From the IMG/VR virus record IMGVR_UViG_3300047445_000186, positions 186,001 through 250,000 of that record: DNA of 64,000 nucleotides. One strand, 5' to 3'. The notes under the pieces are model-generated. The model was not told where the DNA came from. It was given only the letters and a program-made list of their open reading frames with translations, and made no database searches. The position numbers and the translations under genes were made by a program. Of this stretch, positions 5,967 through 44,410 are shown piece by piece. Each line of letters begins with the position of its first letter. Position 1 is the stretch's first letter.

Positions 5967-5997
5967 GAGGGACCCTAGGGTCCCTTTCTTGTTTAGC
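5967..5997. terminator. Palindromic bidirectional terminator-like element, copy 1
   Basis: AGGGACCCTAGGGTCCCT perfect palindrome at 5968-5985 between convergent genes; same element at 22708-22727. Confidence 0.7.
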
Positions 5998-6050
5998 CTA
6001 TCACCTTCGCCGTTCGAGTGCAACCGGCGTCGCCTGGTGAGACCGAGCCG

Positions 6051-10658: not shown

Positions 10659-13339
10659 GCTTGACCTTTAAGAGCAGCGATTTCTGCTTTCAATGTTTTC
10701 ATCTCGGTATTTAGGTCCTTCAGAGCCTCAATCAAAAGGCCAACCATGTTCCCGTACGCAACAGACAGAGTACCGTCAGCATTCTCAAGGACAGCTTCAG
10801 GCAGAACTGCTTGAACTTCCTGAGCGATCACACCAGTTCCGCGCTGTTCATCTTCGATTCGAGTGAAGTTCACTCCGCGAATCTGCTGAACCCGATCCAT
10901 GGCACCAGTGATAACCTCGATGTCCTTCTTCTTGCGGATATCCGAGAAAGCGGTAATGTCACCAGCCATCGTCAGATTGCCGGACATGTCCATCTGGAGT
11001 CTGTTCGCCGATGCCGACCAACCACCGATACGGAAGACGTTGTCAGAGTCGAGACCCATGTTCAAACCGAACGCACCAACTCGGTGGAACGACATTGTCG
11101 CGCTTGTGGCACTCGGAGCGAATGCGCACATATTACCAGACTGGCCTGTGTAACCGGTTCCATTCGTCGATTGGAAGTTCTGACCGCCAGTCCAGGTGTA
11201 TGTGCCGCCGAGCGCGTTCGAAACGCTGTACGTATTCGATGCGTCAGTTGCAGAGGCTGCGCTTGTCGCGTACCCTGCATTCGTCGCGTACCCTGCGTTT
11301 CCAGTGATGTTGATCGTCCAGGTACCAGAAGCGCCACCGCCAGTTGCTGATGGAGCTCCGATCGAGTTGTACGAAATGGTCGTGTTCGCACCACCATTGA
11401 ATCCTGTACCGGATGCAGCACCTGCTCCGCCATTGTTGAACGTGACGGTGTTCACCAATCCAATGTTGATGCTCGCGCTGCCGTCAAAGGCCACACCGTT
11501 GATGGTGCGGGCTGAAGAAAGCACTGCTGCAGCTGCAGCAGTTCCTGTTACGTTGATACCCCACGTACCAGAAGCGCCAGTACCCGTGAGAGATGGGGCG
11601 CCGATCGAGTTGTACGAGATTGTTCTAGCAGCCGATCCGTTGAACGTGCTGCCAGAAGCTGCGCCACCACCTGCACTTGACAGAGTGAGCGCGAAATTTG
11701 TGTTCACTGCGATGTCAGCAGAACCATCGAACGGAACACCGTTGATGTTCCGCGGCGTTTCCAAACGTGTTGCCGTCGTTGAAGTCGCTGCATTCCCGGT
11801 GATTGAGATACCCCAGGTACCTGTTGCTCCAGTACCATCCAACGCAACAGCTGCTGGATTAGAACCTGCAGTAACGCGACCCTTCGAGTCAACAGTGACC
11901 GATGTGTACGTGCCAGGAGTACCGACGTTCGTCAGAGCAAGTTGAGCATTACCGGCCGTTGAGCTTGCAAGATTGTCAACGGTCGTCATGATACCACCGC
12001 CAACATAAACGTCAACGACAAGATTACCGCCGCCGTCGAATGTCAGTCCATGCGCTTCCTTGATCGAGACAAGACCACCGACTGCAACGTTCACGCCATT
12101 GCCGGCAGAGGTGATAACTGGACCAGAGATCGAGGTGTACGTGATTGGATCAGTGCCAAGAGCCGTGATTGTCGCGATCTGAATGAACGTACCCTTACCA
12201 TTCACTGTACCGCCAGCAAGCGTGAAAACGGCCTGCTGAGTCATCTCATTTGGATCGTTCGCGTCATTTGCGCGTGGCCAGGCACCAGTTGCTGCAGTGT
12301 AGATACCGTTCTGGCTTGCAGATGCTTGGTCCTTCACGAGGACACGATCACCAACCGAGAGAGCAACACCGTCAACAGTTTGCAGACCGCTCAAGGTGAT
12401 TGGAGTTGAAGTCGCGACCCGAACTGGAGTCGTCCAGTGCAGACCTTGAACGTACACGTCCACGTAGTCTTTGTTCACGGCATCAGAGCCGGAAGTCGGA
12501 GTCGGAACACCAGTGATCTTTGCACCACCAGACAAGATCAAGTTCCCAGTGATCGTGTCACCGGACTTCGAGACCTTCGTGCTTGTGAGCGTGCTCAGAG
12601 CCGAGGAAACCGTAGCTTGGCTGATTGATGTCAGGTACGAGTCAATTCCAAGGATACGATTCACGTCAGCAGAAGAAGCCGTCAGAGCAGTCAGGAACGA
12701 GTACATTCCTGTGCTGAGGTGCTTGTTCGTATCTGCGATGTGGCCATTCACTGTCGCAGTCAGAGTCGTCAGATCAGTGAGCGCCTGTGGAACTGCGTTC
12801 AGATTCGCAGCAGTCAGAGTCGGCAGATTCAGCGCATCGAGGAACGTGTTCTGATTCGCTGTCAAGTGCAGCGTCAGATCAGTCATGTGACCTGGAAGCT
12901 GATTCACCGAGGTTGCTGACAGGGTCGGCAGATTCAGACCATCGAGGAACGTGTTCTGATTCGCTGTCAAGTGCAGTGCGACATCAGAAGCGTGTGTACC
13001 GGCAGTCGAGGTGATCGTGTTCAGCTGAGTCTGAATCGACGATGTGACACCGTCAACGTAGTTCAGCTCGGTAGCCGTGAGCGTTCCAGCAAGACCATCC
13101 AGCAGAGTGTTCTGTGCTGGAGTCAAGTGCATCGCGTAATCGGATTCGTGCGCAGCACCGAGGGTACCGACGTTGATGAACGTCCAACCGAGCGTCGTCA
13201 TGTACACGCGGAGCTGTTCAAGGTCCGTGCGATAGAAGAACTCGCCGACGTTAGGCGTAGAAGGATCAACGGTACCAGAAGGTACCGTCAGATTCATAAT
13301 CGCAGAACCTTCTACGATTTGTGGACGGTCAATAAGCAT
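10655..13339 (-). CDS. Long tail fibre with C-terminal peptidase S74 chaperone
   Basis: FSDIRKKKDIE...GVIAQEVQAVLPEAV...VAYGNMVGLLIEALK; PRNINGVPFDGSADI and ARTINGVAFDGS fibre repeats; DAVNKDYVD. Confidence 0.9.
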   Translation of the reverse strand: MLIDRPQIVEGSAIMNLTVPSGTVDPSTPNVGEFFYRTDLEQLRVYMTTLGWTFINVGTLGAAHESDYAMHLTPAQNTLLDGLAGTLTATELNYVDGVTSSIQTQLNTITSTAGTHASDVALHLTANQNTFLDGLNLPTLSATSVNQLPGHMTDLTLHLTANQNTFLDALNLPTLTAANLNAVPQALTDLTTLTATVNGHIADTNKHLSTGMYSFLTALTASSADVNRILGIDSYLTSISQATVSSALSTLTSTKVSKSGDTITGNLILSGGAKITGVPTPTSGSDAVNKDYVDVYVQGLHWTTPVRVATSTPITLSGLQTVDGVALSVGDRVLVKDQASASQNGIYTAATGAWPRANDANDPNEMTQQAVFTLAGGTVNGKGTFIQIATITALGTDPITYTSISGPVITSAGNGVNVAVGGLVSIKEAHGLTFDGGGNLVVDVYVGGGIMTTVDNLASSTAGNAQLALTNVGTPGTYTSVTVDSKGRVTAGSNPAAVALDGTGATGTWGISITGNAATSTTATRLETPRNINGVPFDGSADIAVNTNFALTLSSAGGGAASGSTFNGSAARTISYNSIGAPSLTGTGASGTWGINVTGTAAAAAVLSSARTINGVAFDGSASINIGLVNTVTFNNGGAGAASGTGFNGGANTTISYNSIGAPSATGGGASGTWTINITGNAGYATNAGYATSAASATDASNTYSVSNALGGTYTWTGGQNFQSTNGTGYTGQSGNMCAFAPSATSATMSFHRVGAFGLNMGLDSDNVFRIGGWSASANRLQMDMSGNLTMAGDITAFSDIRKKKDIEVITGAMDRVQQIRGVNFTRIEDEQRGTGVIAQEVQAVLPEAVLENADGTLSVAYGNMVGLLIEALKDLNTEMKTLKAEIAALKGQA

Positions 13340-13371: not shown

Positions 13372-13713
13372 TCAGCCAGGCATTCCGTTCGCAGCATGCG
13401 TGACGTCACGTTGCTTCGCCAGATGGATGTACAGCGAATGGAGCATCACGTACAGATCGATGTGATTCGCCGTCTGACCGATTTCGTCACCGGTTGCTGG
13501 ATTTACCAGTGGGAACACGCCTTCTGGATTGAATTCAACCCGAACTGCGCCAACTGGAGTAACTGGCTGATTGAAAGTCGTACCATTCAAAGTAACGACG
13601 TCTTCCTCAGTGAACGTGACGGTCTTCGCACCGGTCAGTGGATTGTCAAGAGTCACGCCCTTAGCACGGCGCCATGCCAATGCTTCTGCTACTGTTTCGC
13701 GATAATCAGCCAT
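13372..13713 (-). CDS. Hypothetical tail-associated protein
   Basis: 113 aa between two fibre genes; overlaps the upstream gene end. Confidence 0.65.
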   Translation of the reverse strand: MADYRETVAEALAWRRAKGVTLDNPLTGAKTVTFTEEDVVTLNGTTFNQPVTPVGAVRVEFNPEGVFPLVNPATGDEIGQTANHIDLYVMLHSLYIHLAKQRDVTHAANGMPG

Positions 13714-14620
13714 TTTCGTTTTCCTTCAATTTTGCTTCCAGTGCTTCCACCTTAGCTGTCAATTCTTTAATGGCCTCAATGAAGAGACCTGCCATATTTC
13801 CGTACGCAACAGACAGCGTGCCGTCTGAATCTTCGTGAATCACCTCAGGCAGAACAACTTGAACTTCCTGAGCGATAACTCCGGTACCACGAACATCATC
13901 TTCGATACGAGTGAAGTTCACTCCTCGAAGCTGATTAACCCGAGCCAGAGCATCAGCGATTACCTCGACGTCTTTCTTCTTACGAATGTCAGAGAACGCG
14001 GTGATGTCTCCGGACATTGTCAGATTGCCGGACATGTCCATCTGGAGTCTGTTCGCCGATGCCGACCAACCGCCAATGCGGAAGTAGTTGTCAGGGTCAA
14101 GACCCATATTGATCGCGTACGCGCCACCTCTGTGGAACGACATCGCGGCGGAACCGCCATCAGTAGAGTACGCTTCCAGTGTATACGTGGTTTGACTACC
14201 TGAGTACGAGCCAGATCCTTTGTTTGACCTGAAGTACTGAGTGGCTTCTGGCCAGGTGTACGATAGACCAACTGCACCAGAAATAGAATTCGTGTTCCCA
14301 GCAGTCGTTGCTGAAGTTGCGGTCGTTGCTGTAGTGGCCGTTGTAGCTGATGTGGCGGTCGTTGCCGATCCGGCCGTCGTAGCTGACGTGGCAGTGCTGG
14401 CATTACCATTCAGCGTGCCATTCAACGTGCCATTCAACGTGTTCGTGAACGTGATCTGCCCATCCGCTGCAATCGCCAAGATCGAACTGCCGAGCGCTCC
14501 CAAGTTACCGCGGTACAGAGTCGCAGTGCCATTTGGCGTATCAGGTGTCTTCAGAACGAAGTTGTTCGAAGCAGTGACGCTGTCGCCAAGCTGAATCGCT
14601 CGTAGTTTGAGATTGGACAT
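13706..14620 (-). CDS. Short tail-fibre protein with C-terminal S74 chaperone
   Basis: ATTA/ATSA repeats; C-terminus closely similar to that of 10655-13339. Confidence 0.85.
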   Translation of the reverse strand: MSNLKLRAIQLGDSVTASNNFVLKTPDTPNGTATLYRGNLGALGSSILAIAADGQITFTNTLNGTLNGTLNGNASTATSATTAGSATTATSATTATTATTATSATTAGNTNSISGAVGLSYTWPEATQYFRSNKGSGSYSGSQTTYTLEAYSTDGGSAAMSFHRGGAYAINMGLDPDNYFRIGGWSASANRLQMDMSGNLTMSGDITAFSDIRKKKDVEVIADALARVNQLRGVNFTRIEDDVRGTGVIAQEVQVVLPEVIHEDSDGTLSVAYGNMAGLFIEAIKELTAKVEALEAKLKENENG

Positions 14621-22326: not shown

Positions 22327-22364
22327 CCGACCGTTACGAAGTCTGGCCGGCCATGGTGTACAAT
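22323..22364 (+). promoter_or_regulatory. GTTAC(G)-N20-TACAAT promoter, copy 1
   Basis: GTAAC 22323, GTTACG 22333-22338, TG-TACAAT 22359-22364, ATG at 22370. Confidence 0.65.
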
Positions 22365-22754: not shown

Positions 22755-24599
22755 TTAGGCACCGCACTTGCACATGCCGGCCTTCAGCTCGTCGATCTGA
22801 GCTTGCTGGGCCTTCACAGCTTCAACGAGCAGACCAACCAAGTTACCGTACGCGACCGACAGGTAACCTTCTTCGTGCGTTTCAACAGCTTCAGGAGCGA
22901 CAGCAATGACGTCCTGAGCGATCAGACCAGTACCACGGATACCGTCGTGAATGCGGGTGAAGTTCACACCAGTAAGCTTCATGACCTTAGCGATCGCGTC
23001 TTCGATCGGCGTAATGTCCTTCTTAGCGCGGCGGTCAGAGAAAGCCGTGACGTTACCCTGAGCGGTGATCGCGCCACCAGCGTAGATGTTACCCGTCATC
23101 GAAGCGCCACCTGCAACACGAAGAGCGCCGTTGTCAGCGTTCCAGTTACCGGAGTTTGCACCGCTCTGAGCGATCAGGTACTGACCGTACGCGGCGTTCG
23201 TTGCCACGGTGTTCACACCTTGGACGTTACCCGTATTGGAAACGATAGCACCACCACCAGAAGTGATCTGACCAGTTGCGTAGATCGCACCAGCGGTCGA
23301 GATCGCGGATGTTGCGTGCGTGAACGTGATGCCGTTGATGACCAGATTGCCGGACATCGTGGAACCATCGCGACGGACGTAGTTCGCGTTCGCCACGGTT
23401 GCTGAGACGTATCCAACTGCATTGCCGAGCTGGCCAACTTCAGTCAGATTCTGATTGTCCCAGAGCGTTCCCCATGCACCCCACGAGCCGACTGTACCGC
23501 TGTCATCGTTCACACGGAAGCGCAGACCGCGAGCAGCAGTTTCTTCAAGGTTCCAGTTCGCTGCGATCTGCAGACCACGAGCGCCTGCTGGAGCAGATTG
23601 ACCCATCAGCGTCAGACCAACTTGGTATTGGCCGATGTCAGACGTGAAGTAGCTGTCAAAGCCGGAGATCGAGTAAGCGGGGAATGTCGTTGGAGCTGGG
23701 GAAGCGGTGCCTGCATCACCGAAATCATAGAACAGAGTTGGACGGCCGGAGACGCCAGTCCAAGGCACGTTCGATGCGTTCGTTGCATTGATCGCGTTCG
23801 TGGCGTTATTTGCGTTGTTCGCAGTAGATGCGTTCGTCGCGAATCCGACGCTCAGGGCGGATTGGGATGCCCACGTTGGAGCAGCAGCACCACCAGAGAG
23901 CAGGACTTGCAGCGCAACACCAGCGGCTGTCGTACCGATCTGCGAAGTGCTAGCGCCGTAAGCGACACCACCAGCGATCGTCGAAGTAGAACCCGTACCA
24001 CCGCGCGTGACAGCGAGGGTACCAGTCGCCATGTTCGATGCGTTCTGATAAAAAGCGCCTTGTTGACCGTCAAGCAGGTCAGCGTCAAGAGTCGAACCAG
24101 CGCCGTCATTGCCAGCGTGCCAGACTTGTTGACCGAGCCATGTCAGACCCGCATCGAGAGACTGAACGCTGATTCCAAGCCCTGGAGTGAGGGTGCCACC
24201 AGTCGACCAATTCGTACCTTGACCGATATTCAGATTGCCGTTCAGACCTTCGAGAACGACTGGCAGCGCGCCGCCATTCTGATTGCCGATCAGGATACGC
24301 TGAACACCGGTGTTCTTCGTGACGCGCAGAACATCAGGAACTGTCAGTGGGCCTGTCAGGACACCACCACCTGTGCTCAGGTACAGATCAGGCGAAACGG
24401 CCGAGGTCCAACCTTGTTGAACTTGCGAGCCGAACTGGCCTGGGTTCGAGTCCTTGATGAACCCGAACAGGTACAGACCCGACGAACCGCCGATCGCGCT
24501 GTCTGTTTTGTAGAACAATGCACCGTCTGATGCTTGTCCTACGGTAGGCAGCGTCGGACCGTAAGAAATGAGTGCGCCGCCGTTGAGGATCTTTGCCAT
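22755..24599 (-). CDS. Tail fibre with C-terminal S74 chaperone
   Basis: Start MAKILNGG with GGAG RBS and TAAATA at 24635-24640; LDADLLDG, TLAVTRGGTG, FSDRRAKKDI...VAYGNLVGLLVEAVK. Confidence 0.85.
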   Translation of the reverse strand: MAKILNGGALISYGPTLPTVGQASDGALFYKTDSAIGGSSGLYLFGFIKDSNPGQFGSQVQQGWTSAVSPDLYLSTGGGVLTGPLTVPDVLRVTKNTGVQRILIGNQNGGALPVVLEGLNGNLNIGQGTNWSTGGTLTPGLGISVQSLDAGLTWLGQQVWHAGNDGAGSTLDADLLDGQQGAFYQNASNMATGTLAVTRGGTGSTSTIAGGVAYGASTSQIGTTAAGVALQVLLSGGAAAPTWASQSALSVGFATNASTANNANNATNAINATNASNVPWTGVSGRPTLFYDFGDAGTASPAPTTFPAYSISGFDSYFTSDIGQYQVGLTLMGQSAPAGARGLQIAANWNLEETAARGLRFRVNDDSGTVGSWGAWGTLWDNQNLTEVGQLGNAVGYVSATVANANYVRRDGSTMSGNLVINGITFTHATSAISTAGAIYATGQITSGGGAIVSNTGNVQGVNTVATNAAYGQYLIAQSGANSGNWNADNGALRVAGGASMTGNIYAGGAITAQGNVTAFSDRRAKKDITPIEDAIAKVMKLTGVNFTRIHDGIRGTGLIAQDVIAVAPEAVETHEEGYLSVAYGNLVGLLVEAVKAQQAQIDELKAGMCKCGA

Positions 24600-24666
24600 T
24601 TGTGCTCCAGGACTTCTGGGTAAATTCGATCCAGTATTTAGCCCGAACCTCCTCTCTGGACGAACT

Positions 24667-24688
24667 TGTAACGTCTGTTCGTTACAAT
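24667..24688 (+). promoter_or_regulatory. TGTAAC-N8-GTTACAAT promoter/operator
   Basis: Inverted repeat whose right arm overlaps a TACAAT -10 box, 21 nt upstream of 24710. Confidence 0.6.
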
Positions 24689-24709
24689 TGAACATTCATA
24701 GGAGAGTAC

Positions 24710-25762
24710 ATGGAACATATGCAATTGGGGCATCTGAACAACGATTTTCGGACGTGCCTGCATCATCTGAATGCGCACGGCATGACTGCGCACCCACGTG
24801 GAACGACCACGAAAGAGCTGCTGAATTACAACATTTCGCTCGGCGATCCACGCAATCGGATCATCAATTTCCCTGATCGGAAGACCAATCTGAAGTACCT
24901 GCTCGGTGAATTCTGCTGGTATCTCGCTGGTGACAACGACCCTGACAGCATCATCCCGTACAGCAAGTTCTGGGACAACATCCGCAATTCTGGCGACATG
25001 CCGGGATACGCGAAGGGCACGATCAATTCGAACTACGGCTATCGTCTGTTCGGTCTGGACAACGAGATGCTCGTTCCGCATGTCGAGAAGGCAATGACTC
25101 CGTACGGTTGCGATGAGACCGGTGCAGTCGTGATCGAGCCGCATGAGACGACAGTGATTCGTGGTCAGAGCCAGTGGGCAGCAGTAGTCGACATGCTCAA
25201 GGCCGACAAGGATTCGCGTCAAGCGATCATGAACATCCATCGCCCAAGTGATCGTCACGTCGGGAACAAGGACGTTGCATGTACCCTGACCCTGCAGTTC
25301 TTCATTCGTGAGAACAAGTTGTTCATGATCACGAACATGCGATCGAACGACATCATTCTCGGCTTCACGAACGACGTGTTCCAGTTCACGATGCTGCAAG
25401 AAGGCCTGATGGTTCAACTGCGTGAAACGTACCCTGAGCTTGAGCTCGGCGCGTACTACCACAATGCAGGTTCGATGCACATCTACGACAGGCACTTCGA
25501 GATGGCGAACAAGATCGTCGCTGACGAACGAGCACTCGAGCTGTCAATGGTTCCAATGGATCGATTCGACTCCGAGATTCTGGACAGCCTGGTCGAGATT
25601 GAAACTGAGTGGCGCAAGGACGGCATGAAGAAGGACTTCAACTTCAATCTGTACACCTCGTACCAGAAGCTCACACCGTACTGGCAGAACCTGATTCAAA
25701 TGTGCTTCGCCGAAGATGGTGAAGCAATGCACGCCGTGTTCGGCATCCCAGAGGAGCATTGA
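24710..25762 (+). CDS. T4 gp42-like dCMP hydroxymethylase/hydroxylase (thymidylate synthase fold)
   Basis: INSNYG, DSRQAIMNIHRPS, catalytic ACT, MRSNDIILGFTND (Asp at the dCMP-specifying position, like gp42 D179) and NAGSMHIYDRHF. Confidence 0.85.
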   Translation: MEHMQLGHLNNDFRTCLHHLNAHGMTAHPRGTTTKELLNYNISLGDPRNRIINFPDRKTNLKYLLGEFCWYLAGDNDPDSIIPYSKFWDNIRNSGDMPGYAKGTINSNYGYRLFGLDNEMLVPHVEKAMTPYGCDETGAVVIEPHETTVIRGQSQWAAVVDMLKADKDSRQAIMNIHRPSDRHVGNKDVACTLTLQFFIRENKLFMITNMRSNDIILGFTNDVFQFTMLQEGLMVQLRETYPELELGAYYHNAGSMHIYDRHFEMANKIVADERALELSMVPMDRFDSEILDSLVEIETEWRKDGMKKDFNFNLYTSYQKLTPYWQNLIQMCFAEDGEAMHAVFGIPEEH

Positions 25763-25763
25763 A

Positions 25764-25940
25764 ATGGAAATGGCATTTGCGCTGTTGCTAGTTCTGATCG
25801 GAGGCTTCGGCCTTCTGGTCGGCTTGAACTTCAGCCACAAGGAAGGTGACGGCGACATGTCGACGTTGTACGCCATAATTGGCGGTGCTTGGGCTGCTGG
25901 CCTTTGCACGTTCGCAGCGAAAGTGATGCACCTCACATGA
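25764..25940 (+). CDS. Small two-TM membrane protein
   Basis: 58 aa with two hydrophobic spans; ATGA-coupled to the next ORF. Confidence 0.65.
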   Translation: MEMAFALLLVLIGGFGLLVGLNFSHKEGDGDMSTLYAIIGGAWAAGLCTFAAKVMHLT

Positions 25941-26146
25941 GCGATAACCTGGTTGGATATAGAGGCGCGACCACTATGGACACCGGGTATTTCTACTGTC
26001 CTTATCCGTTCGGGTCTACTGAAGAGCAGATCCGAGCGATAAACGCGAGCCTTGAAGCATCGCGTCTGACGGAAGAACAACGTGCGTTCCAGCAGAAGCT
26101 CGCAAAGAGCATCAAAGACACACCGAAGGTTCCATGGAAAAGCTGA
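25937..26146 (+). CDS. Small protein with a gp23 major-capsid-like N-terminal motif
   Basis: LVGYRGATTMDTGYFYCPY versus T4 gp23 VGYKGPNEMDAGIYYAPY (recalled). Confidence 0.6.
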   Translation: MSDNLVGYRGATTMDTGYFYCPYPFGSTEEQIRAINASLEASRLTEEQRAFQQKLAKSIKDTPKVPWKS

Positions 26147-26601
26147 CAATCATTGCGTACTACAGGCCTGAAAGCGATAAGAACGCGTTCGCCATCCGCG
26201 GCGAAGTCTCTGAACGGTACGAGTCGCTATACAAGTGGCTGAGTGGCGGGAAGTGCTCGGCTCGGTCCGTGTACAGCGACATGCCGTGGGACGTGATCGT
26301 TTTCGATGATCCATTCGATGAGCAATCGTTCCTCGTGTTCTATGAAGGTGACATCGAATTCAGCACCATGCAGGGAGACGAGCCGTACCGTCCGCTGCCG
26401 AAGATCAAGTACAAGCAAGGTGTCGTGCCGGCCGAAGAGCGAGTGATCGGTCAGTCGTACCTTGGGAACTGCGGGCACTATCACGTTCATCAGGACCCGA
26501 ACCGGGATTTCATGGGCGAACTTGCAGACACTTTGGCCGCCGAGATCTCTCGGGAGATTGACAACGAGATCCTAGAACAGCTCCGCAAAGAATTCACTTA
26601 A
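26134..26601 (+). CDS. Hypothetical protein with a gp23 major-capsid-like C-terminal helix
   Basis: ELADTLAAEISREIDNEIL versus T4 gp23 ELSGILATEIMLEINREVV (recalled). Confidence 0.6.
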   Translation: MEKLTIIAYYRPESDKNAFAIRGEVSERYESLYKWLSGGKCSARSVYSDMPWDVIVFDDPFDEQSFLVFYEGDIEFSTMQGDEPYRPLPKIKYKQGVVPAEERVIGQSYLGNCGHYHVHQDPNRDFMGELADTLAAEISREIDNEILEQLRKEFT

Positions 26602-26617
26602 AGTCTAGAATACCTCA

Positions 26618-28363
26618 ATGAGATACGAAAAACAAATTCTCGAGGCGTACGATCGCCTTGAGTTCAAACCACGTGGTCGTCAGGTCGAAGACATCGACAC
26701 GATCATGACCTCGTTCCTCGATGAGGGATTCAAGACCGTGATTCTGTCGGCTCCGACTGGCACGGGTAAGTCGATCATTGGTGCCGTTACTGCTGAAGCT
26801 CTGCACCGCATTCGCTGGCCGGATCTGAACGCGAACGCGAGCTTCTTGCTCACGCCAACGAACATTCTGTCTCAGCAGTACCACGACACCTTCCAAGAAG
26901 GACGTGATCCGAATGACACGCGTTTCCGGATGATCAAGGGCGCTGGGAACTTCCCATGCGAGGCTCTTAGCACGGAGTCTGAACCGCAGACCGCCGAGTC
27001 GTGCGCGCTCCGTCTGTTCCAGAAAGAGCAGATGACTTCGATGATCGACACGTTCTGCAATGGATGTGACTTCGCCCATCAGAAGAAGATGCGTGACAAG
27101 TCGCGCCATCTGATCACGAACTACGCGTACTACTTCATCGATCGGATGTACATGGAGATGCTCGCGAAGCGAACCGTGTGCGTGTTCGACGAAGCGCATT
27201 TGCTGAACGATCTGTTCACCGAGCACAACGCGATCTACTTCAGCGATTCGCGTCTGAAGAAGATGGCCGAGGAAATCAACGAAGGCCTATCGCTCGGGCA
27301 CACTGAAGTGTTCAAGATCCTGAAGACGGTGAAGACGGATCTGAATGCCGGGAAGATCAACGATCAGACGTACATGAACTATCTGCACCAGCTTGCAGAC
27401 GCGTACGGGCAAGTCACTGAAGCGGCTCAAGAAGCGGCTGAACGTGAAGTGCGGAATCCGAAGAAGTACCTGCAACTCTCGCGCCTGTCGAAGAAGTACT
27501 TCGGCCTTGGCTGCAAGATTGGTGACCTTGTTGAGTACGGGTACCCACATGCATTCGAGTACAAGGAACGGAATCCGAAGTTCAATCAGCACGAAGACGA
27601 AATCTCCGTGAAGCCAATCTTCGTTGGCGACATGTTCGACAAGCTGATCAACGCAGATTACAACCTACTGATGTCGGCAACGTTCAGCGAGCAGTTCGCT
27701 CGTCGTACCCTGACCCTCGAGAACGCGAAGCACATCCGTCTGCAACCTTCGTTCCCGAAAGAGAACAAGAAGGTCGTGTTCTACAAGCCGCAGAATCTGA
27801 ACTTCACCTCGCTGAAAGAGTCGAAGACAGTGAAGCAGCTTCAAGCGACCTGCTACGAGATCGCGAAGCACCACACCGACAAGGGTGAACGTGGTATCGT
27901 GCTCGCTCCGAGCTTCGCGCTGAATGAAGGCATTGCCGCTGCGTTCGACGTGATGGGTCTGAAGGCACGAGTGTTCGAGCACAAGCGCGGTGAGAAGCTC
28001 GCTGAAGTTCTGGGTCGATTCAAGCGACACACTGACGGACCTGCAGTGATGCTCACTCCGTCTGGCTTCGAGGGTATGGACTTGGCTGGTGATCTGAGCC
28101 GTTATCAGATCATCTTGAAGGCACCGTTCGGTTCGCTGGGTGAAGCGCGGATGAAGAAGATTCTGGCAACGTGGCCTGACATTTACTCGCTGCTTTGCAC
28201 GATGAAGCTCGTTCAAGGTGCTGGTCGTTCGGTCCGTGGGCCAGATGACTACGCCACGACGTACATGCTCGACACGAACATTCAGCGTCTCTGGACAGCG
28301 AAGAACATGGAATGGGCTGATGAGTTCCAGACGATCTTCACTTCGATGCTGAGCGACGACTAA
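26618..28363 (+). CDS. DinG/Rad3-like SF2 helicase
   Basis: SAPTGTGKS, FDEAHLL, LMSATF, GFEGMDL and QGAGRSVRGPDD. Confidence 0.85.
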   Translation: MRYEKQILEAYDRLEFKPRGRQVEDIDTIMTSFLDEGFKTVILSAPTGTGKSIIGAVTAEALHRIRWPDLNANASFLLTPTNILSQQYHDTFQEGRDPNDTRFRMIKGAGNFPCEALSTESEPQTAESCALRLFQKEQMTSMIDTFCNGCDFAHQKKMRDKSRHLITNYAYYFIDRMYMEMLAKRTVCVFDEAHLLNDLFTEHNAIYFSDSRLKKMAEEINEGLSLGHTEVFKILKTVKTDLNAGKINDQTYMNYLHQLADAYGQVTEAAQEAAEREVRNPKKYLQLSRLSKKYFGLGCKIGDLVEYGYPHAFEYKERNPKFNQHEDEISVKPIFVGDMFDKLINADYNLLMSATFSEQFARRTLTLENAKHIRLQPSFPKENKKVVFYKPQNLNFTSLKESKTVKQLQATCYEIAKHHTDKGERGIVLAPSFALNEGIAAAFDVMGLKARVFEHKRGEKLAEVLGRFKRHTDGPAVMLTPSGFEGMDLAGDLSRYQIILKAPFGSLGEARMKKILATWPDIYSLLCTMKLVQGAGRSVRGPDDYATTYMLDTNIQRLWTAKNMEWADEFQTIFTSMLSDD

Positions 28364-28409: not shown

Positions 28410-29528
28410 ATGGCAAATCAACCTCTCGCAAGAAAAGCAAAGCGCGAGCAGAAGGCAACACGCTCCACCCGCCGCCGACTGTCAGATAATCCCAGACACG
28501 CAGTTTACGAAGACAACTTCATGGATGAACCACAACTAGAAAATTCGCGGAACGCAGGGCCTGATGGCGTTGTGTTCGGTGTGTACGGTCTCGATGACTG
28601 GGTCACGAACACATACCTCCGAAATGCCGTCGAAAAAGGCATGAACACCCTCAGCCTTGAGGGCACATGGATCACCCCGTCGAGCTGGAAGCTCCATGAG
28701 TGGGTCACGGCGAAAGCTGAGCGATTCAACTTCATGTCGGCCAATCGTGCTCTCGCATGGTTCAGCTGGGGCATGATCGAACTGACCCTGACATCGGGTA
28801 AGCTCTGCATCGAGCTGAACGGTACGCCAGAAGAAGTCGTCGCATTCGTTGCATCGGTTGACGGTGAAATGAAGCGCGCCGAGAATCTGATCGAGTGGAT
28901 CTACAACACGAAGGGCGACAGCATCTCGGTTCCGCTGAACTATCGTGCAGCAGTTCCAGGCGCGTACCCTTGGCTCCCAACGGAGATCGGTGAGTACATC
29001 GACGGGTACATGAACTCGAACGCGAGTGTGCTCGTTCTGATCGGCCCTCCAGGCACCGGCAAGACGTCGTTCATCAAGCAGCTCATTCACCGCTCTGGCA
29101 GTGACGCGAAGATCACGTACGACGAGAAGGTCATGAGCGACGACTCGCTGTTCGCAGGGTTCGTGGAAGACGATGCAAAGTTCCTGATCATGGAAGATGC
29201 GGACGCATTCCTGAAGAGCCGAGCCGATGGGAACACGATGATGCATCGCTTCCTGAACGTGTCGGATGGTTTGATCTCGGCCCGCGACAAGAAGCTCGTG
29301 TTCAGCACGAATCTCCCGTCGATCCGTGACATCGATGACGCGCTTCTCCGGGCTGGTCGCTGCTACGACGTGATCGAGTTCCGTGCTCTCACGCGAGCTG
29401 AAGCCGAGCCAGTGGCTGCCGAGCTTGGGCTGGAGCTCCGAGATGGTGCCGAGTTCACACTGGCCGAGCTGTTCAATGAGCAACCTTCCAGTGGTCGTAA
29501 AAATGTTCGAAAGGTCGGATTCGTATGA
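28410..29528 (+). CDS. AAA-family ATPase
   Basis: Walker A GPPGTGKT, Walker B IMEDAD, FSTN sensor and LLRAGRC arginine finger. Confidence 0.85.
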   Translation: MANQPLARKAKREQKATRSTRRRLSDNPRHAVYEDNFMDEPQLENSRNAGPDGVVFGVYGLDDWVTNTYLRNAVEKGMNTLSLEGTWITPSSWKLHEWVTAKAERFNFMSANRALAWFSWGMIELTLTSGKLCIELNGTPEEVVAFVASVDGEMKRAENLIEWIYNTKGDSISVPLNYRAAVPGAYPWLPTEIGEYIDGYMNSNASVLVLIGPPGTGKTSFIKQLIHRSGSDAKITYDEKVMSDDSLFAGFVEDDAKFLIMEDADAFLKSRADGNTMMHRFLNVSDGLISARDKKLVFSTNLPSIRDIDDALLRAGRCYDVIEFRALTRAEAEPVAAELGLELRDGAEFTLAELFNEQPSSGRKNVRKVGFV

Positions 29529-31394: not shown

Positions 31395-31835
31395 ATGACA
31401 CTAATATTTGAAATCAAAGCGGCCCAATTGGCCGCTCGTAAAGAACGTCGGGCAGCGGATGTTGCTGTGCTGACGACCCTGATCGGTGAGGCGGAAATCA
31501 TCGGCAAGAACGATGGAAATCGCGCAGTCACGGACCAGGAAGTGCAGGCCGTAATTAAGAAGTTCATCAAGAATATCGATGAGGTTCTGAAGGTCGTAAA
31601 TCCTGGGTCTGATCAATTCACGACCGCTCAGGAAGAGAAGATTCTTCTGAGCACGTTCCTGCCTGTGCAGCTCTCTGAAGCTGACCTGCGGCTGATCATT
31701 CAAACCGTGATCGATGCACATCAGCTCGTGGCTCCAAAGGGTCTCGGTGTTCTGATGAAGGAACTGAAGGACTCGCATAACGGCACGTACGATGGTGCGC
31801 TTGCCTCGAAACTTGCAAAGGAATTGTTGAAGTGA
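31395..31835 (+). CDS. GatB/YqeY-domain protein
   Basis: EEKILLSTFLPVQLSEADL, GVLMKELK and YDGALAS match the YqeY pattern. Confidence 0.8.
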   Translation: MTLIFEIKAAQLAARKERRAADVAVLTTLIGEAEIIGKNDGNRAVTDQEVQAVIKKFIKNIDEVLKVVNPGSDQFTTAQEEKILLSTFLPVQLSEADLRLIIQTVIDAHQLVAPKGLGVLMKELKDSHNGTYDGALASKLAKELLK

Positions 31836-33001
31836 AAGTTGGTGTAGTTAAACTTGGTGCTCGCATTACCTGGGAAACCGACGCAGCTGTCGGTCCTGGT
31901 GAAGCGATCTCGATCTGCAAGGCACTCACGCGAGGTGGGGCTGAGGTCCATGTGTTCACGAAGATTCTGGCGAAGGACACGCTCGATCCGTCGATTCAGT
32001 GGCACAATACGGTTGGCAGCGATGCACGTTCAATCCATGCAGGTCAAGACCTCGACACGACCGGTCTCGATGCTCTGCTCGTGATTAACGGGAATGTGAA
32101 CTTCTTCGGTGGCGCCGAAGATCGTGCTCAGATTCTGAATTACACGATCATCAATCGGTTCGCGGGTCCGGTGATCTACGTGATGTGCGACCCTGAACTG
32201 CCGATGCTGCAGATCTGGGAGAACGTCTCGAAGAAGCAAGTCGATCCGAAGTACAACTGGGAGAACGTGTACGCTGAGTCGGACATTCGTGTCACGAAGC
32301 CGATCAATGTGCTCTGCCAGCCGTTCAATGTTCAGGCAATGCAGGAAACGTGGAAGAGCAAGAAGGGCGCTGTGCCACTCGGCACGATGTTCCACTTCCC
32401 GATGGAACGCTTCCCGCTCCTGAACGAGTGGCTAGATTACGCCGAAACTCCGGCAGTCGATCTGCTCTACGGCGGTACGGCTCGTGGTGGGCGCCGCATT
32501 CCGAATCTGTACAAGTGGTACTGCGGTCTGCCTGAAGATCTGAACGTCGAAATCTTCGGCAAGATCGACAATGAAGACTTCGAGAAGCACAACAAGATCG
32601 GGAAGCTTCCAGTGAAACGGTACCCAACGTTCACGGGTATGGTGAAGTACTCTGAAGTGCTACCAAAGATGAACAACGCTCTTGCGCATCTGGTCACTGG
32701 CGATCCGTCGTACGAAACGCTCGATCTGATTCCTCAACGCGTTGCCGAGTGCATCGCCGCTGGGAACATCGTGTTCATCGACGCGAACATCGACAAGAGC
32801 CGTCGGATCTATCCTGTTGGAACCGAGGCGCATGACTTCCTGTACGTGCAGACGCAAGATGAACTCGTCGAGCGACTGCGTGTGCTGAAGGAAGAGCCAA
32901 GTCTGCGCTCCACTCTGTGGCAGCAACAGACGATCGCAACGAACTTCAACGCCGACACGTTCACAAAGTCGTTGGTCACGAAGATCGCGGAGTTCGTATG
33001 A
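31832..33001 (+). CDS. bgt: T4 beta-glucosyltransferase-family DNA glycosyltransferase (GT-B)
   Basis: Colinear with T4 BGT: LLVINGNVNFFGG, DLLYGGTARGGRR, VEIFGK, PTFTG, FIDANIDKSRRI. The sugar donor is not established. Confidence 0.85.
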   Translation: MKVGVVKLGARITWETDAAVGPGEAISICKALTRGGAEVHVFTKILAKDTLDPSIQWHNTVGSDARSIHAGQDLDTTGLDALLVINGNVNFFGGAEDRAQILNYTIINRFAGPVIYVMCDPELPMLQIWENVSKKQVDPKYNWENVYAESDIRVTKPINVLCQPFNVQAMQETWKSKKGAVPLGTMFHFPMERFPLLNEWLDYAETPAVDLLYGGTARGGRRIPNLYKWYCGLPEDLNVEIFGKIDNEDFEKHNKIGKLPVKRYPTFTGMVKYSEVLPKMNNALAHLVTGDPSYETLDLIPQRVAECIAAGNIVFIDANIDKSRRIYPVGTEAHDFLYVQTQDELVERLRVLKEEPSLRSTLWQQQTIATNFNADTFTKSLVTKIAEFV

Positions 33002-39549: not shown

Positions 39550-39595
39550 CGGTGCCGATCACCGTTACAGATTGACCCTGCAAGTGTGGTACAAT
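39545..39595 (+). promoter_or_regulatory. TGTAAC-N13-GTTACA-N20-TACAAT promoter, copy 2
   Basis: TGTAACGGT / ACCGTTACA inverted repeat; GTTACA 39564-39569, TACAAT 39590-39595. Confidence 0.7.
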
Positions 39596-39601
39596 TCACC
39601 C

Positions 39602-41143
39602 ATGAACACCACACTGAACCCTGTCGCCGAAGCTGCTGCCGCAGTCTTCCTGCCCAGCCCTCAGCAAGCGGACTTCTTCAAGTGGATCCTTGAAGGCGTT
39701 GGCTCCTGCGTTCTGGAAGCTGTCGCTGGTGCCGGCAAGACGACCACGCTGATTCAAGCGCTTGGCCTGATGGTCGGAACGATCTTCCTCGGTGCATTCT
39801 CGAAGAACATCGCGGTCGAGATCGAAGCACGCGCGCCGAAGAAGCCGGGTCTGTTCATCAGCACGATGCATGCTGCTGGTTTCAGGGCCTGGCGCCGCGC
39901 CGCTCCGAAGGTCCGCATCGACGAAGACAAGTGCCGGAACATCTTCCGCAATGCGTGCCTGAAGTACCCCGAGTACAAGCCATTCGAGCAGCCGGTCCTG
40001 AAGCTCGTCGAAATGGCAAAGCAATCCGCCGTCGGTATCACGAAGTCCGAAGCTGACCGGAACGTGTGGGTCGAGATCATCGAGCACTTCGACATCGAGA
40101 CTTTCGACGAAGAACTCGGCGTCGACAACACGAACAAGATCATCAGCCTCGCTCGCAAGACCCTGCAACGTTCGCAAGAGATGGACATGGACGCCGTTGA
40201 CTTCAACGACATGATCTACGCGCCGCTGTTCCACAACGTGCGTATGTTCGAACACGACTGGGTGCTGGTTGATGAAGCCCAAGACACGAACGAGATTCGT
40301 CGCCTTCTCGCCCTGCGGATGCTGAAGCGCGGTGGACGTCTGGTCGCAGTTGGTGATCGTCACCAAGCGATCTTCGGTTTCACCGGTGCCGATTCGAAGG
40401 CACTCGAGATGATCGCGACGGCCGTGAACGCGAAGCTCCTCCCGCTCACGATCACGTATCGCTGCCCGAAGTCAGTCGTTGCTTACGCAAAGCAATGGGT
40501 GAACCACATCGAAGCTGCCGAAACCGCGCCTGAAGGCGTCGTGTCCCACGGTGATGTGAACAACCTGTTCAGCCTCGCGGTTCCTGGTGACGCAATCCTC
40601 TGCCGCTTCAACGCGCCGCTGATCAAGTATGTGTATCAGTTCATCGCCCGCGGTATTCCCGCGAAGGTCGAAGGTCGCGAAATTGGCGAAGGTCTGAAGG
40701 TCCTCGCACGTCGCTGGAAGGTCAAGAAGCTCGCTGCCATGACCGACAAGCTCGACGCGTACCTCGAGCGTGAAGTCGCGAAATGGCGCGTGAAGGAACA
40801 AGAAGCGAAGGCCGCCGCGGTCGAAGACAAGGTGAACTGCCTCCGCGTGATCATCGATCGCGTCGCCAAGATCGATCCGAACTGCGCGAATCCGGTCGAA
40901 CGCGTTTGTGAAGAAGTCGACGCGATCTTCACCCAAGAAAAGGGACAGAAGGTCGTGCTGTTCAGCTCGATCCACAAGGCCAAGGGTCGCGAATGGCACA
41001 AGGTTGTTTGGCTCCAAACCGGTCCTTCTGCTTGGGCTCGCAAGGAATGGGAACAAGAGCAAGAGGATAACCTCTGCTACGTTGCAGCAACTCGTGCAAA
41101 GCACGAACTCTGCCTGGTCGATATCTCGAAGGAAGAAAAGTGA
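39602..41143 (+). CDS. UvrD/Rep-like SF1 helicase
   Basis: AVAGAGKTT, LVDEAQD, VGDRHQAIFGF, TYRCP, SIHKAKGREW and YVAATRAK. Confidence 0.9.
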   Translation: MNTTLNPVAEAAAAVFLPSPQQADFFKWILEGVGSCVLEAVAGAGKTTTLIQALGLMVGTIFLGAFSKNIAVEIEARAPKKPGLFISTMHAAGFRAWRRAAPKVRIDEDKCRNIFRNACLKYPEYKPFEQPVLKLVEMAKQSAVGITKSEADRNVWVEIIEHFDIETFDEELGVDNTNKIISLARKTLQRSQEMDMDAVDFNDMIYAPLFHNVRMFEHDWVLVDEAQDTNEIRRLLALRMLKRGGRLVAVGDRHQAIFGFTGADSKALEMIATAVNAKLLPLTITYRCPKSVVAYAKQWVNHIEAAETAPEGVVSHGDVNNLFSLAVPGDAILCRFNAPLIKYVYQFIARGIPAKVEGREIGEGLKVLARRWKVKKLAAMTDKLDAYLEREVAKWRVKEQEAKAAAVEDKVNCLRVIIDRVAKIDPNCANPVERVCEEVDAIFTQEKGQKVVLFSSIHKAKGREWHKVVWLQTGPSAWARKEWEQEQEDNLCYVAATRAKHELCLVDISKEEK

Positions 41144-44360: not shown

Positions 44361-44389
44361 ACCCGACATCCCGGGTGTGAGGTTCAAGT

Positions 44390-44410
44390 TGTAACGATTT
44401 CGGTTACAAT
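44390..44410 (+). promoter_or_regulatory. TGTAAC-N7-GTTACAAT promoter/operator
   Basis: Inverted repeat overlapping TACAAT, upstream of the isomerase gene. Confidence 0.6.

What the first reader, a model, noticed from the sequence alone, without database searches (positions are those of the whole stretch)
25937..26601. Two small ORFs each carry an isolated major-capsid (gp23) motif: possible capsid decoys
Seen: 25937-26146 begins LVGYRGATTMDTGYFYCPY, and 26134-26601 ends ELADTLAAEISREIDNEIL. Established, from recall of T4 gp23: VGYKGPNEMDAGIYYAPY and ELSGILATEIMLEINREVV are conserved capsid segments. My manual alignments give about 10/18 identities, and about 9/23 when the second is extended by four residues upstream. 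The motifs lie in the reverse of their gp23 order, are embedded in unrelated sequence, and follow a TACAAT-type promoter rather than TAAATA. Inference: these are capsid-mimic peptides made before the real capsid protein. They could titrate host defences that sense capsid proteins, modulate head assembly, or interfere with co-infecting phages.
Basis: partly seen in the sequence, partly recalled or inferred. Interest (0 to 1): 0.8.

Follow-up and report, generated by a model that had tools for sequence, protein, structure and literature searches.

The report
Capsid-protein fragments on small phage proteins
Two small genes of an uncultured giant phage each carry a true copy of one core piece of the phage's major capsid protein; one copy, a long helix, is the conserved heart of a previously undescribed protein family, so it is probably a working capsid-derived module, though what it does is untested.

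Summary
ORF1 (25937-26146, 69 aa) matches Pfam Gp23 above its curated cut-off. It carries the capsid protein's C-terminal strand-turn-strand (GY.G..MD.GYFYCPY). ORF2 (26134-26601, 155 aa) ends in a 29-residue helix that specifically matches the capsid "spine helix": profile-profile probability 96%, E 9e-9. Column-shuffled controls score no more than 7 bits, against 37 for the real profile.

The two ORFs differ in status. ORF2 belongs to an unannotated family that sits in a fixed slot (thymidylate-synthase-like gene, ORF2, DinG-like helicase, AAA ATPase) in related uncultured phages. The helix is its best-conserved part. In one lineage only the helix and a small Cys/His knuckle remain. ORF1 is an orphan found only in this phage, inserted in a variable slot.

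More capsid-fragment small ORFs turned up, one in this genome and four in two other phages. Capsid mimicry is therefore plausible and recurrent. The "immune decoy" reading is untested and not favoured. My best guess is a capsid-derived docking helix that engages head-assembly partners. A function unrelated to the capsid is nearly as likely. The promoter claim holds only as a recurring TACAAT motif upstream of the operon.

The parts
24666..24688 (+). Promoter-like motif TTGTAAC-N9-GTTACAAT, 22 nt upstream of the first gene of the operon
   Evidence: Read from the sequence. The same motif occurs at 44388-44410, before the gene at 44439. A related GTTAC-N~18-TGnTACAAT motif occurs at 22359, 39590, 48181 and 58442. 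12 of 13 TACAAT hexamers are on the + strand. Function not shown.
24710..25762 (+). Divergent thymidylate-synthase-like gene (probable pyrimidine hydroxymethylase), first gene of the array
   Evidence: Pfam Thymidylat_synt E 8e-22; phrog_160 E 1e-43. It is the conserved left neighbour of the ORF2 slot in relatives.
25764..25940 (+). 58-aa protein with two hydrophobic stretches (reading from the translation); its stop overlaps the ORF1 start (ATGA)
   Evidence: Sequence and gene calls. A homologue in relative L004 abuts the ORF2 homologue directly, with no ORF1 between them.
25937..26146 (+). ORF1, 69 aa: orphan chimera made of a capsid-derived N-terminal segment and an unrelated tail that the ESM Atlas's own low-confidence model (mean pLDDT 0.53) matches only to helical segments
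   Evidence: Pfam Gp23 above cut-off. The only database matches are identical copies from the same phage in five contigs. Codon statistics single out its frame as the coding one, but usage is atypical: +0.11, against +0.43 +/- 0.12 for genes and -0.55 off frame. ESM Atlas structure rows align only residues about 22-65, to helical or coiled-coil proteins.
25949..26005 (+). ORF1 residues 5-23, LVGYRGATTMDTGYFYCPY: copy of the capsid protein's C-terminal P-domain strand-turn-strand
   Evidence: 12/19 aa and 37/57 nt identical to this phage's own capsid gene. Best match is 16/19 aa and 45/57 nt, to another phage's capsid gene (L012). There is a one-residue deletion in the variable loop.
26134..26601 (+). 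ORF2, 155 aa: member of a conserved unannotated family. Its start lies 13 nt inside the end of ORF1
   Evidence: Homologues at 48-65% identity and more distant ones at 26-40%. AlphaFold2 mean pLDDT 93.3. No significant fold match.
26146..26361 (+). ORF2 N-terminal beta-beta-alpha-beta-beta-alpha domain (about residues 5-76), which also exists as stand-alone 70-90 aa proteins
   Evidence: Secondary structure. Stand-alone homologues. Weak, non-significant resemblance to ClpS (E 0.13) and eIF1/SUI1 (Foldseek E 0.02).
26449..26490 (+). ORF2 Cys/His knuckle (GQSYLGNCGHYHVH; WC.RC..FH in distant members)
   Evidence: Family alignments. Metal binding is inferred only.
26503..26598 (+). ORF2 C-terminal helix (residues 124-155): copy of the capsid spine helix, and the best conserved part of the family
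   Evidence: Helix 126-154 with block-mean pLDDT 93-98. hhalign 95.7%, E 8.8e-9. Specificity and shuffle controls. 13/24 aa identical to the own capsid helix, including EIDNEIL, but only 7 of 13 identical residues use the same codon. 40% identity between distant family groups, against 15-32% for the other regions.
26618..28363 (+). DinG/XPD-like helicase, conserved right neighbour of the ORF2 slot
   Evidence: Pfam ResIII, DEAD_2 and Helicase_C_2; phrog_2488 E 2e-75. Synteny.
28410..29528 (+). AAA-type ATPase, next conserved gene of the array
   Evidence: PF00004 AAA on record for this gene in its contig; phrog_14322 (unknown function) E 1e-60. Synteny.

Best explanation
What it is. ORF1 and ORF2 are real genes of an early- or middle-type gene array: TS-like gene, 58-aa protein with two hydrophobic stretches, ORF1, ORF2, DinG-like helicase, AAA ATPase. 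The array belongs to an uncultured 332-kb jumbo phage of the T4 superfamily. Each ORF carries a homologous copy of one core element of the P domain of this phage class's gp23-type major capsid protein (MCP). ORF1 has the C-terminal strand-turn-strand. ORF2 has the spine helix.

The two are of different age. ORF2's helix, together with a small Cys/His knuckle, is the ancient, best-conserved and sometimes only surviving part of a family fixed at this genomic slot. ORF1 is a lineage-specific chimera that landed next to it.

How it most likely works (inferred). The helix is a capsid-derived docking module. Because it keeps the residue pattern of the MCP spine helix, it binds what that helix binds. 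That would be either the P-domain sheet or N-arm of unassembled MCP, or the scaffold/core that contacts this face. A protein made before the late genes could thereby engage the head-assembly machinery. It might hold back or poison premature or competitor assembly, or it might be carried into proheads as cargo. ORF1, whose stop overlaps the ORF2 start, may supply the complementary P-domain strand.

Shown: homology, specificity, conservation, synteny, and that the genes look real. Inferred: timing, binding partner, effect.
For: - Specific homology of both segments to the MCP.
- The own MCP was retrieved (L139:1593-2846, Pfam Gp23 E 2e-83) and aligned. It shares EIDNEIL and GYFYCPY with the ORFs, while synonymous sites differ. 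These are therefore not recent duplications.
- The helix is the best conserved region of the family. It is retained when the N-domain is lost (69-aa form in the same slot) or split off into a separate gene.
- The same helix appears on unrelated N-terminal parts, and alone, in other phages: L141 446-817 and L144 7324-7473. PHROG phrog_14392, a 47-residue profile, is hit by ORF2 (E 4.7e-4), by 7 of the 31 family members (best E 3.6e-5) and, more weakly, by the own MCP helix (E 0.0087).
- Fragment-bearing small ORFs cluster in three independent cases: ORF1+ORF2 here, helix+strand in L144, helix+N-arm in L141.
- In an all-against-all control over the window plus the MCP locus, the MCP supplies three of the nine hits at E<0.01, including the strongest (E 8e-13 and 4e-6). 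Only two unrelated pairs score in that range (1e-5 and 1e-4); the rest are weak.
- From established knowledge of the HK97 fold and the T4 gp23/gp24 structures (PMC9546572): the segment before the E-loop, the spine helix and the C-terminal strands together build the P domain. C-terminal helices are the usual way scaffolds and cargo dock on HK97-fold shells.
Against: - No binding, timing or virion data exist; the phage is uncultured.
- ORF2's strict synteny is with DNA-metabolism genes, not head genes.
- I found no sign that ORF2 helices co-vary with the MCP helix of their own phage. Only one true pair was available.
- ORF1 has no relatives, and its codon usage is atypical.
- The third fragment in this genome (N-arm on a phrog_34511 protein, L139:6032-6586) evolves faster than its core and is truncated in relatives. 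At least some fragments are therefore decaying relics.
- The AlphaFold2 model of the own MCP was poor (pLDDT 46). Placing the motifs in the 3D fold rests on alignment to T4 gp23 and on the literature.
Confidence: 0.38

Rival explanations
1. Exapted helix with a job unrelated to the capsid. The helix was captured from a capsid gene long ago. It now serves as an oligomerisation or docking helix for the neighbouring DinG-like helicase or AAA ATPase, within the DNA replication and hypermodification module. On this view the capsid likeness is only inherited.
For: - The slot between the TS-like gene and the helicase/AAA genes is invariant even at 27-32% identity.
- The cluster also holds a glucosyltransferase, a YqeY-like gene and, in a relative, a 5-hmdU DNA kinase domain.
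- A promoter-like motif and a same-strand array shared with DNA-metabolism genes.
- A Cys/His knuckle precedes the helix.
Against: - After exaptation the pattern would be expected to drift away from the capsid consensus. Family helices still share 10-15 of 24 positions with capsid helices.
- The same helix occurs in other genomic contexts and right next to other capsid fragments.
- In one relative the right-hand neighbour is an AAA gene with no helicase.
Confidence: 0.3
2. Immune decoy or sponge. The fragments are made early and occupy host sensors that recognise capsid protein, blunting abortive infection.
For: - Capsid proteins are frequent triggers of defence systems (PMC9712102; reviewed in PMC13728456).
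- The fragments copy the most conserved capsid elements.
- Early-type genomic placement.
Against: - No sensor is known for these elements in this phage group.
- For Lit, the isolated Gol peptide suffices to activate the sensor (PMC3014915). For CapRel, binding of the capsid protein activates it (as summarised in PMC13728456). A plain copy would trigger rather than block.
- No paper describing such decoys was found.
- ORF2's position is conserved like a core gene, not variable like typical anti-defence accessory genes.
Confidence: 0.1
3. ORF1 specifically is a neutral by-product. An illegitimate-recombination event created a chimera that captured about 20 codons of a capsid gene, possibly from another phage. 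It persists in a variable slot without a capsid-related function.
For: - It is a singleton among 5.8 billion proteins.
- It is absent from the same slot in relatives, where other small ORFs sit instead.
- Its codon usage is atypical.
- It is closer to other phages' capsid genes than to its own.
- The N-arm fragment elsewhere in this genome shows a decay series in relatives.
Against: - Its junctions fit the array exactly: an ATGA overlap upstream and a 13-nt overlap with ORF2.
- A 69-codon open frame in the coding-like frame.
- The invariant capsid residues are kept while the variable loop changed.
- It lies directly beside the one other capsid-fragment gene in the window.
Confidence: 0.35
4. 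In-situ wreck of a capsid paralogue. The region would be what is left of a tandem g23-g24-like pair: the 3' end of one copy followed by the middle of the next.
For: - The strand-then-helix order is what a tandem pair would leave.
- In L144, helix and strand mini-ORFs sit directly after the capsid gene, where T4 has g24.
Against: - The ORF2 N-domain and knuckle are a separate conserved fold with stand-alone homologues.
- Relatives have ORF2 without ORF1.
- No capsid similarity appears in any other frame or in the sequence between the motifs.
Confidence: 0.03
5. Chance or compositional resemblance of an acidic amphipathic helix and a short Gly/Tyr-rich strand.
For: The segments are short, and ORF2 on its own is below the Pfam cut-off.
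Against: - Shuffle control: 36.7 bits for the real profile against at most 7.2.
- No hits to the acidic coiled-coil scaffold proteins in the same loci.
- In PDB, the best helix matches among 177,635 sequences are the T4 gp24 entries.
- ORF1 scores above the Pfam cut-off.
Confidence: 0.02

Closest known systems
T4-type major capsid protein gp23 / vertex protein gp24 (Pfam PF07068, HK97 fold)
   Same: The ORF1 segment and the ORF2 helix are homologous to two P-domain elements of this family. They are closest to the subclass used by the jumbo phages in this sample (EID.EI helix, GYFYCPY strand).
   Different: Only about 20 and about 30 residues are shared. Neither ORF can form an HK97 fold. The rest of each protein is unrelated.
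Capsid-targeting and cargo-loading peptides: the T4 internal-protein capsid targeting sequence, encapsulin C-terminal cargo-loading peptides, and the C-terminal helices of scaffolding proteins and SaPI CpmB (PMC5644958)
   Same: A short, conserved terminal peptide or helix occurs on different small proteins in phages with HK97-fold shells. Its modular distribution across different N-terminal parts resembles that of a tag.
   Different: The known tags bind the shell and do not copy a shell element. The T4 tag is N-terminal and cleaved. No encapsidation evidence exists here. The comparison rests on my own knowledge plus PMC5644958.
Gol peptide of T4 gp23, the trigger of the Lit protease (PMC3014915)
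   Same: It shows that an isolated conserved gp23 segment can be biologically active on its own. The third fragment in this genome (L139:6032-6586) copies the segment that aligns to T4 gp23* chain residues 21-75. I recall that segment as the Gol region.
   Different: ORF1 and ORF2 copy other segments. Gol acts as a trigger of host defence, not as a phage countermeasure.
PHROG phrog_14392 (47-residue profile, unknown function) and phrog_12830 (128-residue profile annotated as major head protein)
   Same: Short phage ORF families already in PHROGs match capsid elements. phrog_14392 is hit by the ORF2 helix, by 7 family members, and more weakly (E 0.0087) by the own MCP helix. phrog_12830 is hit by the N-arm fragment ORF (E 2e-4).
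   Different: Neither family is characterised. I could not inspect their members.

Membership tests
Major capsid protein Gp23 (PF07068) | Score above the curated gathering threshold | tested here: met
   ORF1 scores 27.6 bits against a cut-off of 24.4. ORF2 does not meet it (15.2 bits).
Major capsid protein Gp23 (PF07068) | Coverage of the HK97-fold core (N-arm, E-loop, P and A domains; about 376 profile positions) | tested here: not met
   ORF1 covers profile positions 304-340 and ORF2 covers 169-195. No other part or frame matches. They are fragments, not capsid proteins.
ORF2 family (unannotated; defined here) | N-terminal beta-beta-alpha-beta-beta-alpha domain with the F.IRG..Y..W and D.PW.Y..F motifs | tested here: met
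ORF2 family (unannotated; defined here) | Cys/His knuckle followed by the C-terminal helix L[SA].EI..EID.EIL | tested here: met
ORF2 family (unannotated; defined here) | Syntenic slot between the TS-like gene and the DinG-like helicase / AAA genes | tested here: met
   Exception: relative L001 has an AAA gene but no helicase as right neighbour.
ClpS adaptor | Significant sequence or fold match to the ClpS core | tested here: not met
   Profile search against PDB gives E 0.13 over 51 residues. No ClpS entry among the 50 Foldseek PDB matches shown.
eIF1/SUI1/YciH fold | Structural match with TM above 0.5 and a significant E-value | tested here: inconclusive
   Best Foldseek E 0.02; TM 0.27 normalised to the query and 0.36-0.42 to the target. 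Topology is similar, with no sequence support.
Capsid targeting / cargo-loading tags | The tagged protein is found inside proheads or virions, and the tag binds the shell or scaffold | not testable with these tools
   Uncultured phage, no proteomics.
Anti-defence decoy or sponge | Binds a host sensor or its signal and relieves defence | not testable with these tools
   No host, no sensor identified. No precedent found in the literature searches.

The most novel reading that the evidence does not exclude
Jumbo phages of this group use a set of small proteins that each display one element of the capsid protein's P domain (N-arm strand, spine helix, C-terminal strand). The elements dock on one another or on unassembled capsid protein, forming a split pseudo-P-domain. 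Made ahead of the late genes, this would be a capsid-mimic system. It could interfere with a competitor's head assembly, or present or occlude the capsid epitope seen by host sensors. The ORF2 helix family would be its conserved core, and ORF1 a newly recruited partner.
Probability: 0.12. Interest if true: 0.85.

Novelty: new variant of a known kind. Interest (0 to 1): 0.6.

Why it matters
If the helix really works as a capsid-derived docking or mimic module, it would be a new way for phage accessory proteins to tap into head assembly or capsid sensing. It would also give a simple sequence signature for finding such proteins: a small ORF with an isolated capsid P-domain element.

Even on the conservative reading, three things stand:
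- A conserved, widespread small-protein family of jumbo phages is now defined.
- Its functional core is traced to an exapted fragment of the capsid gene.
- Pfam Gp23 hits on short ORFs are shown to be neither noise nor mis-called capsid genes.

Tried and rejected
- **Close relatives in GenBank phages:** megablast of the region found none, and tblastn of ORF2 found nothing at all. The nearest cultured relative is Ralstonia phage RsoM2USA, by topoisomerase at only 46% identity.
- **ClpS lead for the ORF2 N-domain:** rejected.
- **Fold and language-model searches:** Foldseek against PDB and BFVD, and the ESM Atlas, gave nothing significant.
- **AlphaFold2 of the own capsid protein:** failed (pLDDT 46). 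I did not use it for mapping beyond noting a 30-residue helix at 192-221.
- **Co-variation of ORF2 helices with the capsid helix of the same phage:** only one true pair was available. A same-sample pair (P0015 and L112) showed no special match. Attempts to find more ORF2 loci on capsid-bearing IMG/VR contigs found only the window's own contig or unrelated contigs, mostly short.
- **Recent-duplication origin:** rejected. Nucleotide identity to the own capsid gene is 59-65% and synonymous codons differ. No near-identical donor was found among 169 capsid genes.
- **ORF1's tail as a frameshifted capsid 3' end:** no support in any frame.
- **Generic sigma-70 and terminator scan:** at chance level.
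- **Possible helicase fragment at 5997-6212:** a blastp hit (E 1e-4) to the helicase at 39572-41143 had no DNA-level support and was dropped.
- **Operators' note on "read laying":** no tool of that name was offered, so it had no effect.
Full report
**Where the window comes from.** The window is bases 186001-250000 of a 331,776-bp contig from a JGI metagenome. The same contig is held as IMGVR_UViG_3300047445_000186. Its genes identify a jumbo phage of the T4 superfamily:
- topoisomerase II large and medium subunits;
- a Dda-like helicase and a beta-glucosyltransferase;
- two thymidylate-synthase-like genes;
- several tail-fibre genes matching long-tail-fibre PHROG families at their C-termini; Peptidase_S74 is on record for the one at 22755-24695.

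No close relative exists among 50,697 GenBank phages. The nearest by topoisomerase is Ralstonia phage RsoM2USA, at 46% identity.

**The locus.** On the + strand, a promoter-like motif lies at 24666-24688. After it the genes run head to tail:
- a divergent TS-like gene (24710-25762);
- a 58-aa protein with two hydrophobic stretches (25764-25940);
- ORF1 (25937-26146);
- ORF2 (26134-26601);
- a DinG/XPD-like helicase (26618-28363);
- an AAA ATPase (28410-29528).

The stop of the 58-aa gene overlaps the ORF1 start (ATGA). The ORF2 start lies 13 nt inside ORF1. Five contigs from different samples carry this stretch with identical DNA, so there is no within-species variation to analyse.

ORF1 residues 5-55 hit Pfam Gp23 above the curated threshold (27.6 against 24.4 bits, E 2.5e-6). 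tblastn places residues 5-36 on annotated major capsid genes of 1445 phage records.

ORF2 alone is sub-threshold (15.2 bits, E 0.014), but its family settles the matter:
- Profile-profile comparison with the capsid family gives 95.7% probability and E 8.8e-9 over 34 columns (an independent run).
- An HMM of the helix alone was searched against 24,448 six-frame segments from 227 loci. After the ORF2 relatives it finds only capsid spine helices (E to 4e-9) plus two small ORFs discussed below. It finds none of the acidic coiled-coil scaffold proteins encoded next to those capsid genes.
- One hundred column-shuffled profiles reach at most 7.2 bits, against 36.7 for the real one.
- Eleven of 31 family members hit Pfam Gp23 on their own, and no other family recurs.
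- In PDB, the best matches to the helix among 177,635 sequences are the T4 gp24 entries.

**The phage's own capsid gene.** I found it with a degenerate DNA pattern for the most conserved capsid motif. It is L139:1593-2846, 417 aa, Pfam Gp23 E 2e-83. It belongs to a capsid subclass shared by many uncultured jumbo phages. That subclass has the spine-helix consensus LSAEIVSEIDNEII and the C-terminal consensus GYKGG.GE.D.GYFYCPY.

Both ORF motifs are nearer to this subclass than to T4:
- ORF2 shares 13 of 24 helix positions with its own capsid protein, including the run EIDNEIL.
- ORF1 shares 12 of 19 positions with its own capsid protein and 16 of 19 with another phage's.

Nucleotide identity to the own capsid gene is only 59-65%. 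More than 40% of identical residues use different codons. These are therefore not recent duplications.

**ORF2 is a conserved family whose core is the helix.** Searches of the large protein collections found:
- six close homologues at 48-65% identity;
- 59 cluster representatives at E up to 0.001; the more distant ones put into the family alignment are 26-40% identical to ORF2.

None is annotated. Even at 27-32% identity the gene sits in the same slot, after the TS-like gene and before the helicase or AAA genes.

AlphaFold2 with the family alignment gives a confident model (pLDDT 93.3). It has a beta-beta-alpha-beta-beta-alpha domain, a short hairpin carrying the Cys/His knuckle, and a 29-residue C-terminal helix, 126-154. 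Foldseek finds no significant relative; the weak resemblances are to eIF1/SUI1. A ClpS lead did not hold.

The parts are modular:
- The N-domain occurs alone in 70-90 aa proteins.
- In one lineage the gene is split into an 81-aa and a 69-aa gene.
- In an abundant lineage only the 69-aa knuckle-plus-helix form remains in the slot.

Between distant family groups the helix is the best conserved region: 40% identity, against 15-32% elsewhere. The helix is therefore under selection and is probably the business end of the protein.

**ORF1 is an orphan.** The 5.8-billion-protein collection holds only identical copies. In relatives the space between the TS-like gene and ORF2 holds other things:
- an unrelated 75-aa ORF (L003);
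- only the 58-aa protein's homologue (L004);
- an AAA gene (L224).

ORF1's frame is clearly the coding-like one (+0.11, against -0.5 for the other two frames). It falls 2.7 SD below typical genes of this phage and has lower GC3. That fits a recently acquired or weakly selected gene. It keeps most of the capsid family's invariant residues here (G, Y, G, then MD.GYFYCPY), though the invariant Lys is Arg. It differs in the variable loop by a one-residue deletion. Its remaining 46 residues match nothing. The Atlas's own low-confidence model aligns them only to helical proteins.

**The phenomenon is wider than the finding.** The capsid HMM picked up further small ORFs.

(i) In this genome, 3.2 kb downstream of the capsid gene, L139:6032-6586 (184 aa) starts with a copy of the capsid N-arm segment. 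It shares 24 of 36 residues with the own capsid protein and hits Pfam Gp23 at 39 bits. That segment is fused to a phrog_34511 core. It aligns to T4 gp23* chain residues 21-75, which I recall as the Gol region (PMC3014915 describes Gol as the most conserved part of gp23). Most of the 68 homologues lack this extension. Those that have it show it in progressively truncated and faster-evolving forms. This looks like a decaying relic.

(ii) In contig L141, inside a non-structural gene neighbourhood, an ORF ending in a spine-helix copy (446-817) lies one gene away from an ORF ending in an N-arm copy (1034-1378).

(iii) In contig L144, directly after the capsid gene, a 49-aa ORF consists essentially of the helix (7324-7473). 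It overlaps a 55-aa ORF carrying an IYCPYVP strand (7181-7348).

PHROGs already contains a 47-residue family (phrog_14392). It is hit by ORF2, by seven family members and, more weakly, by the own capsid helix.

As a control, I compared all 1392 small six-frame segments with all 53 segments of 250 aa or more from the window plus the capsid locus. Nine hits passed E<0.01. Three of them are the capsid fragments, including the strongest (E 8e-13 and 4e-6). Only two unrelated pairs scored in that range (1e-5 and 1e-4); the rest were weak.

**What the three elements are.** By alignment to T4 gp23 and established knowledge of the HK97 fold and the T4 head structures (PMC9546572), three segments are the discontinuous pieces that build the P domain:
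- the segment before the E-loop;
- the long spine helix;
- the C-terminal strands after the A domain.

I could not verify contacts myself, because my model of the own capsid protein was poor.

**Mechanism.** Nothing here measures function, so what follows is inference.

The reading I favour (0.38) is that the ORF2 helix is a capsid-derived docking module. It still recognises what the spine helix recognises: the capsid P-domain sheet or N-arm in unassembled subunits, or the scaffold face. This would let a protein made ahead of the late genes engage head assembly, as a brake, a poison for competitors, or cargo. ORF1 may contribute the complementary strand. The support for this reading is:
- retention of the capsid residue pattern over long divergence;
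- the tag-like modular distribution of the helix;
- the repeated side-by-side occurrence of complementary fragments.

Nearly as likely (0.30) is that the helix was simply exapted. On that reading it now serves the DNA-metabolism module in which it is so strictly embedded.

The immune-decoy idea (0.10) has no evidence. It also faces a logical problem: for Lit the isolated peptide is enough to trigger the sensor, and for CapRel binding of the capsid protein triggers it.

For ORF1 taken alone, a neutral chimeric by-product remains a serious possibility (0.35).

An in-situ wreck of a capsid paralogue is effectively excluded for the window. So is chance resemblance.

**Promoter claim.** The generic scan is at chance. 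However, TACAAT at 24683-24688 is part of TTGTAAC-N9-GTTACAAT, which recurs before the gene at 44439. A second motif, GTTAC-N~18-TGnTACAAT, recurs at four other sites, mostly intergenic. Twelve of 13 TACAAT hexamers are on the + strand. TATAAATA is absent from the window, but the late promoter of this phage group is unknown. Early or middle expression of the array is plausible, not shown.

**Verdict.** The decoy function is untested. I found no description of such capsid-fragment modules in the literature searched.

Noticed in passing
window 22359, 24666-24688, 39590, 44388-44410, 48181, 58442: Two recurring promoter-like motifs on the + strand: TTGTAAC-N9-GTTACAAT (two copies, each just upstream of a gene start) and GTTAC-N~18-TGnTACAAT (four copies). 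They may be this phage's early or middle promoter classes.
   Followed up: partly
L139:6032-6586 (same contig as the window, outside it): A 184-aa protein whose first ~40 residues copy the capsid N-arm segment (which I recall as the Gol region), fused to a phrog_34511 core. Most homologues (131 aa) lack the extension, and a few show it in decaying form.
   Followed up: yes
L141:446-817 and L141:1034-1378; L144:7324-7473 and L144:7181-7348: Other uncultured phages carry small ORFs with isolated capsid elements. In L141, helix and N-arm copies sit near a 2H-phosphoesterase-like gene and an HNH gene (my reading of the translations). In L144, a helix-only 49-aa ORF overlaps a strand-bearing 55-aa ORF right after the capsid gene, where T4 has g24.
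   Followed up: partly
window 24710-25762, 61431-62369 and 31832-33001: The window holds a divergent and a canonical thymidylate-synthase-like gene plus a beta-glucosyltransferase. A relative has a 5-hmdU DNA kinase domain nearby. This suggests hypermodified pyrimidines in the DNA.
   Followed up: no
window 10655-13339, 13706-14620, 22755-24695 (all - strand): Three tail-fibre genes whose C-terminal parts match the same long-tail-fibre PHROG families (Peptidase_S74 is on record for the third). This points to several receptor-binding fibres.
   Followed up: no
slot between the TS-like gene and ORF2: window 25764-26133; L003:1874-2101; L004:348-554; L224:3367-4275: This slot is variable among relatives. 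It holds, in turn, the 58-aa protein plus ORF1, an unrelated 75-aa ORF, the 58-aa protein's homologue only, or an AAA gene. It appears to be a local hot spot for gene gain and loss.
   Followed up: partly
L010:3370-4824; L015:3284-4831: A large (484-515 aa) Cys-rich ORF lies immediately beside the capsid gene in several related contigs, on either strand. It may be a mobile endonuclease-like gene. Such an element could explain how capsid-gene pieces get moved.
   Followed up: no
window 5997-6212 versus 39572-41143: A weak protein-level resemblance (E 1e-4, 41 aa) between a small frame and the Dda-like helicase, with no DNA-level similarity. Probably spurious.
   Followed up: yes
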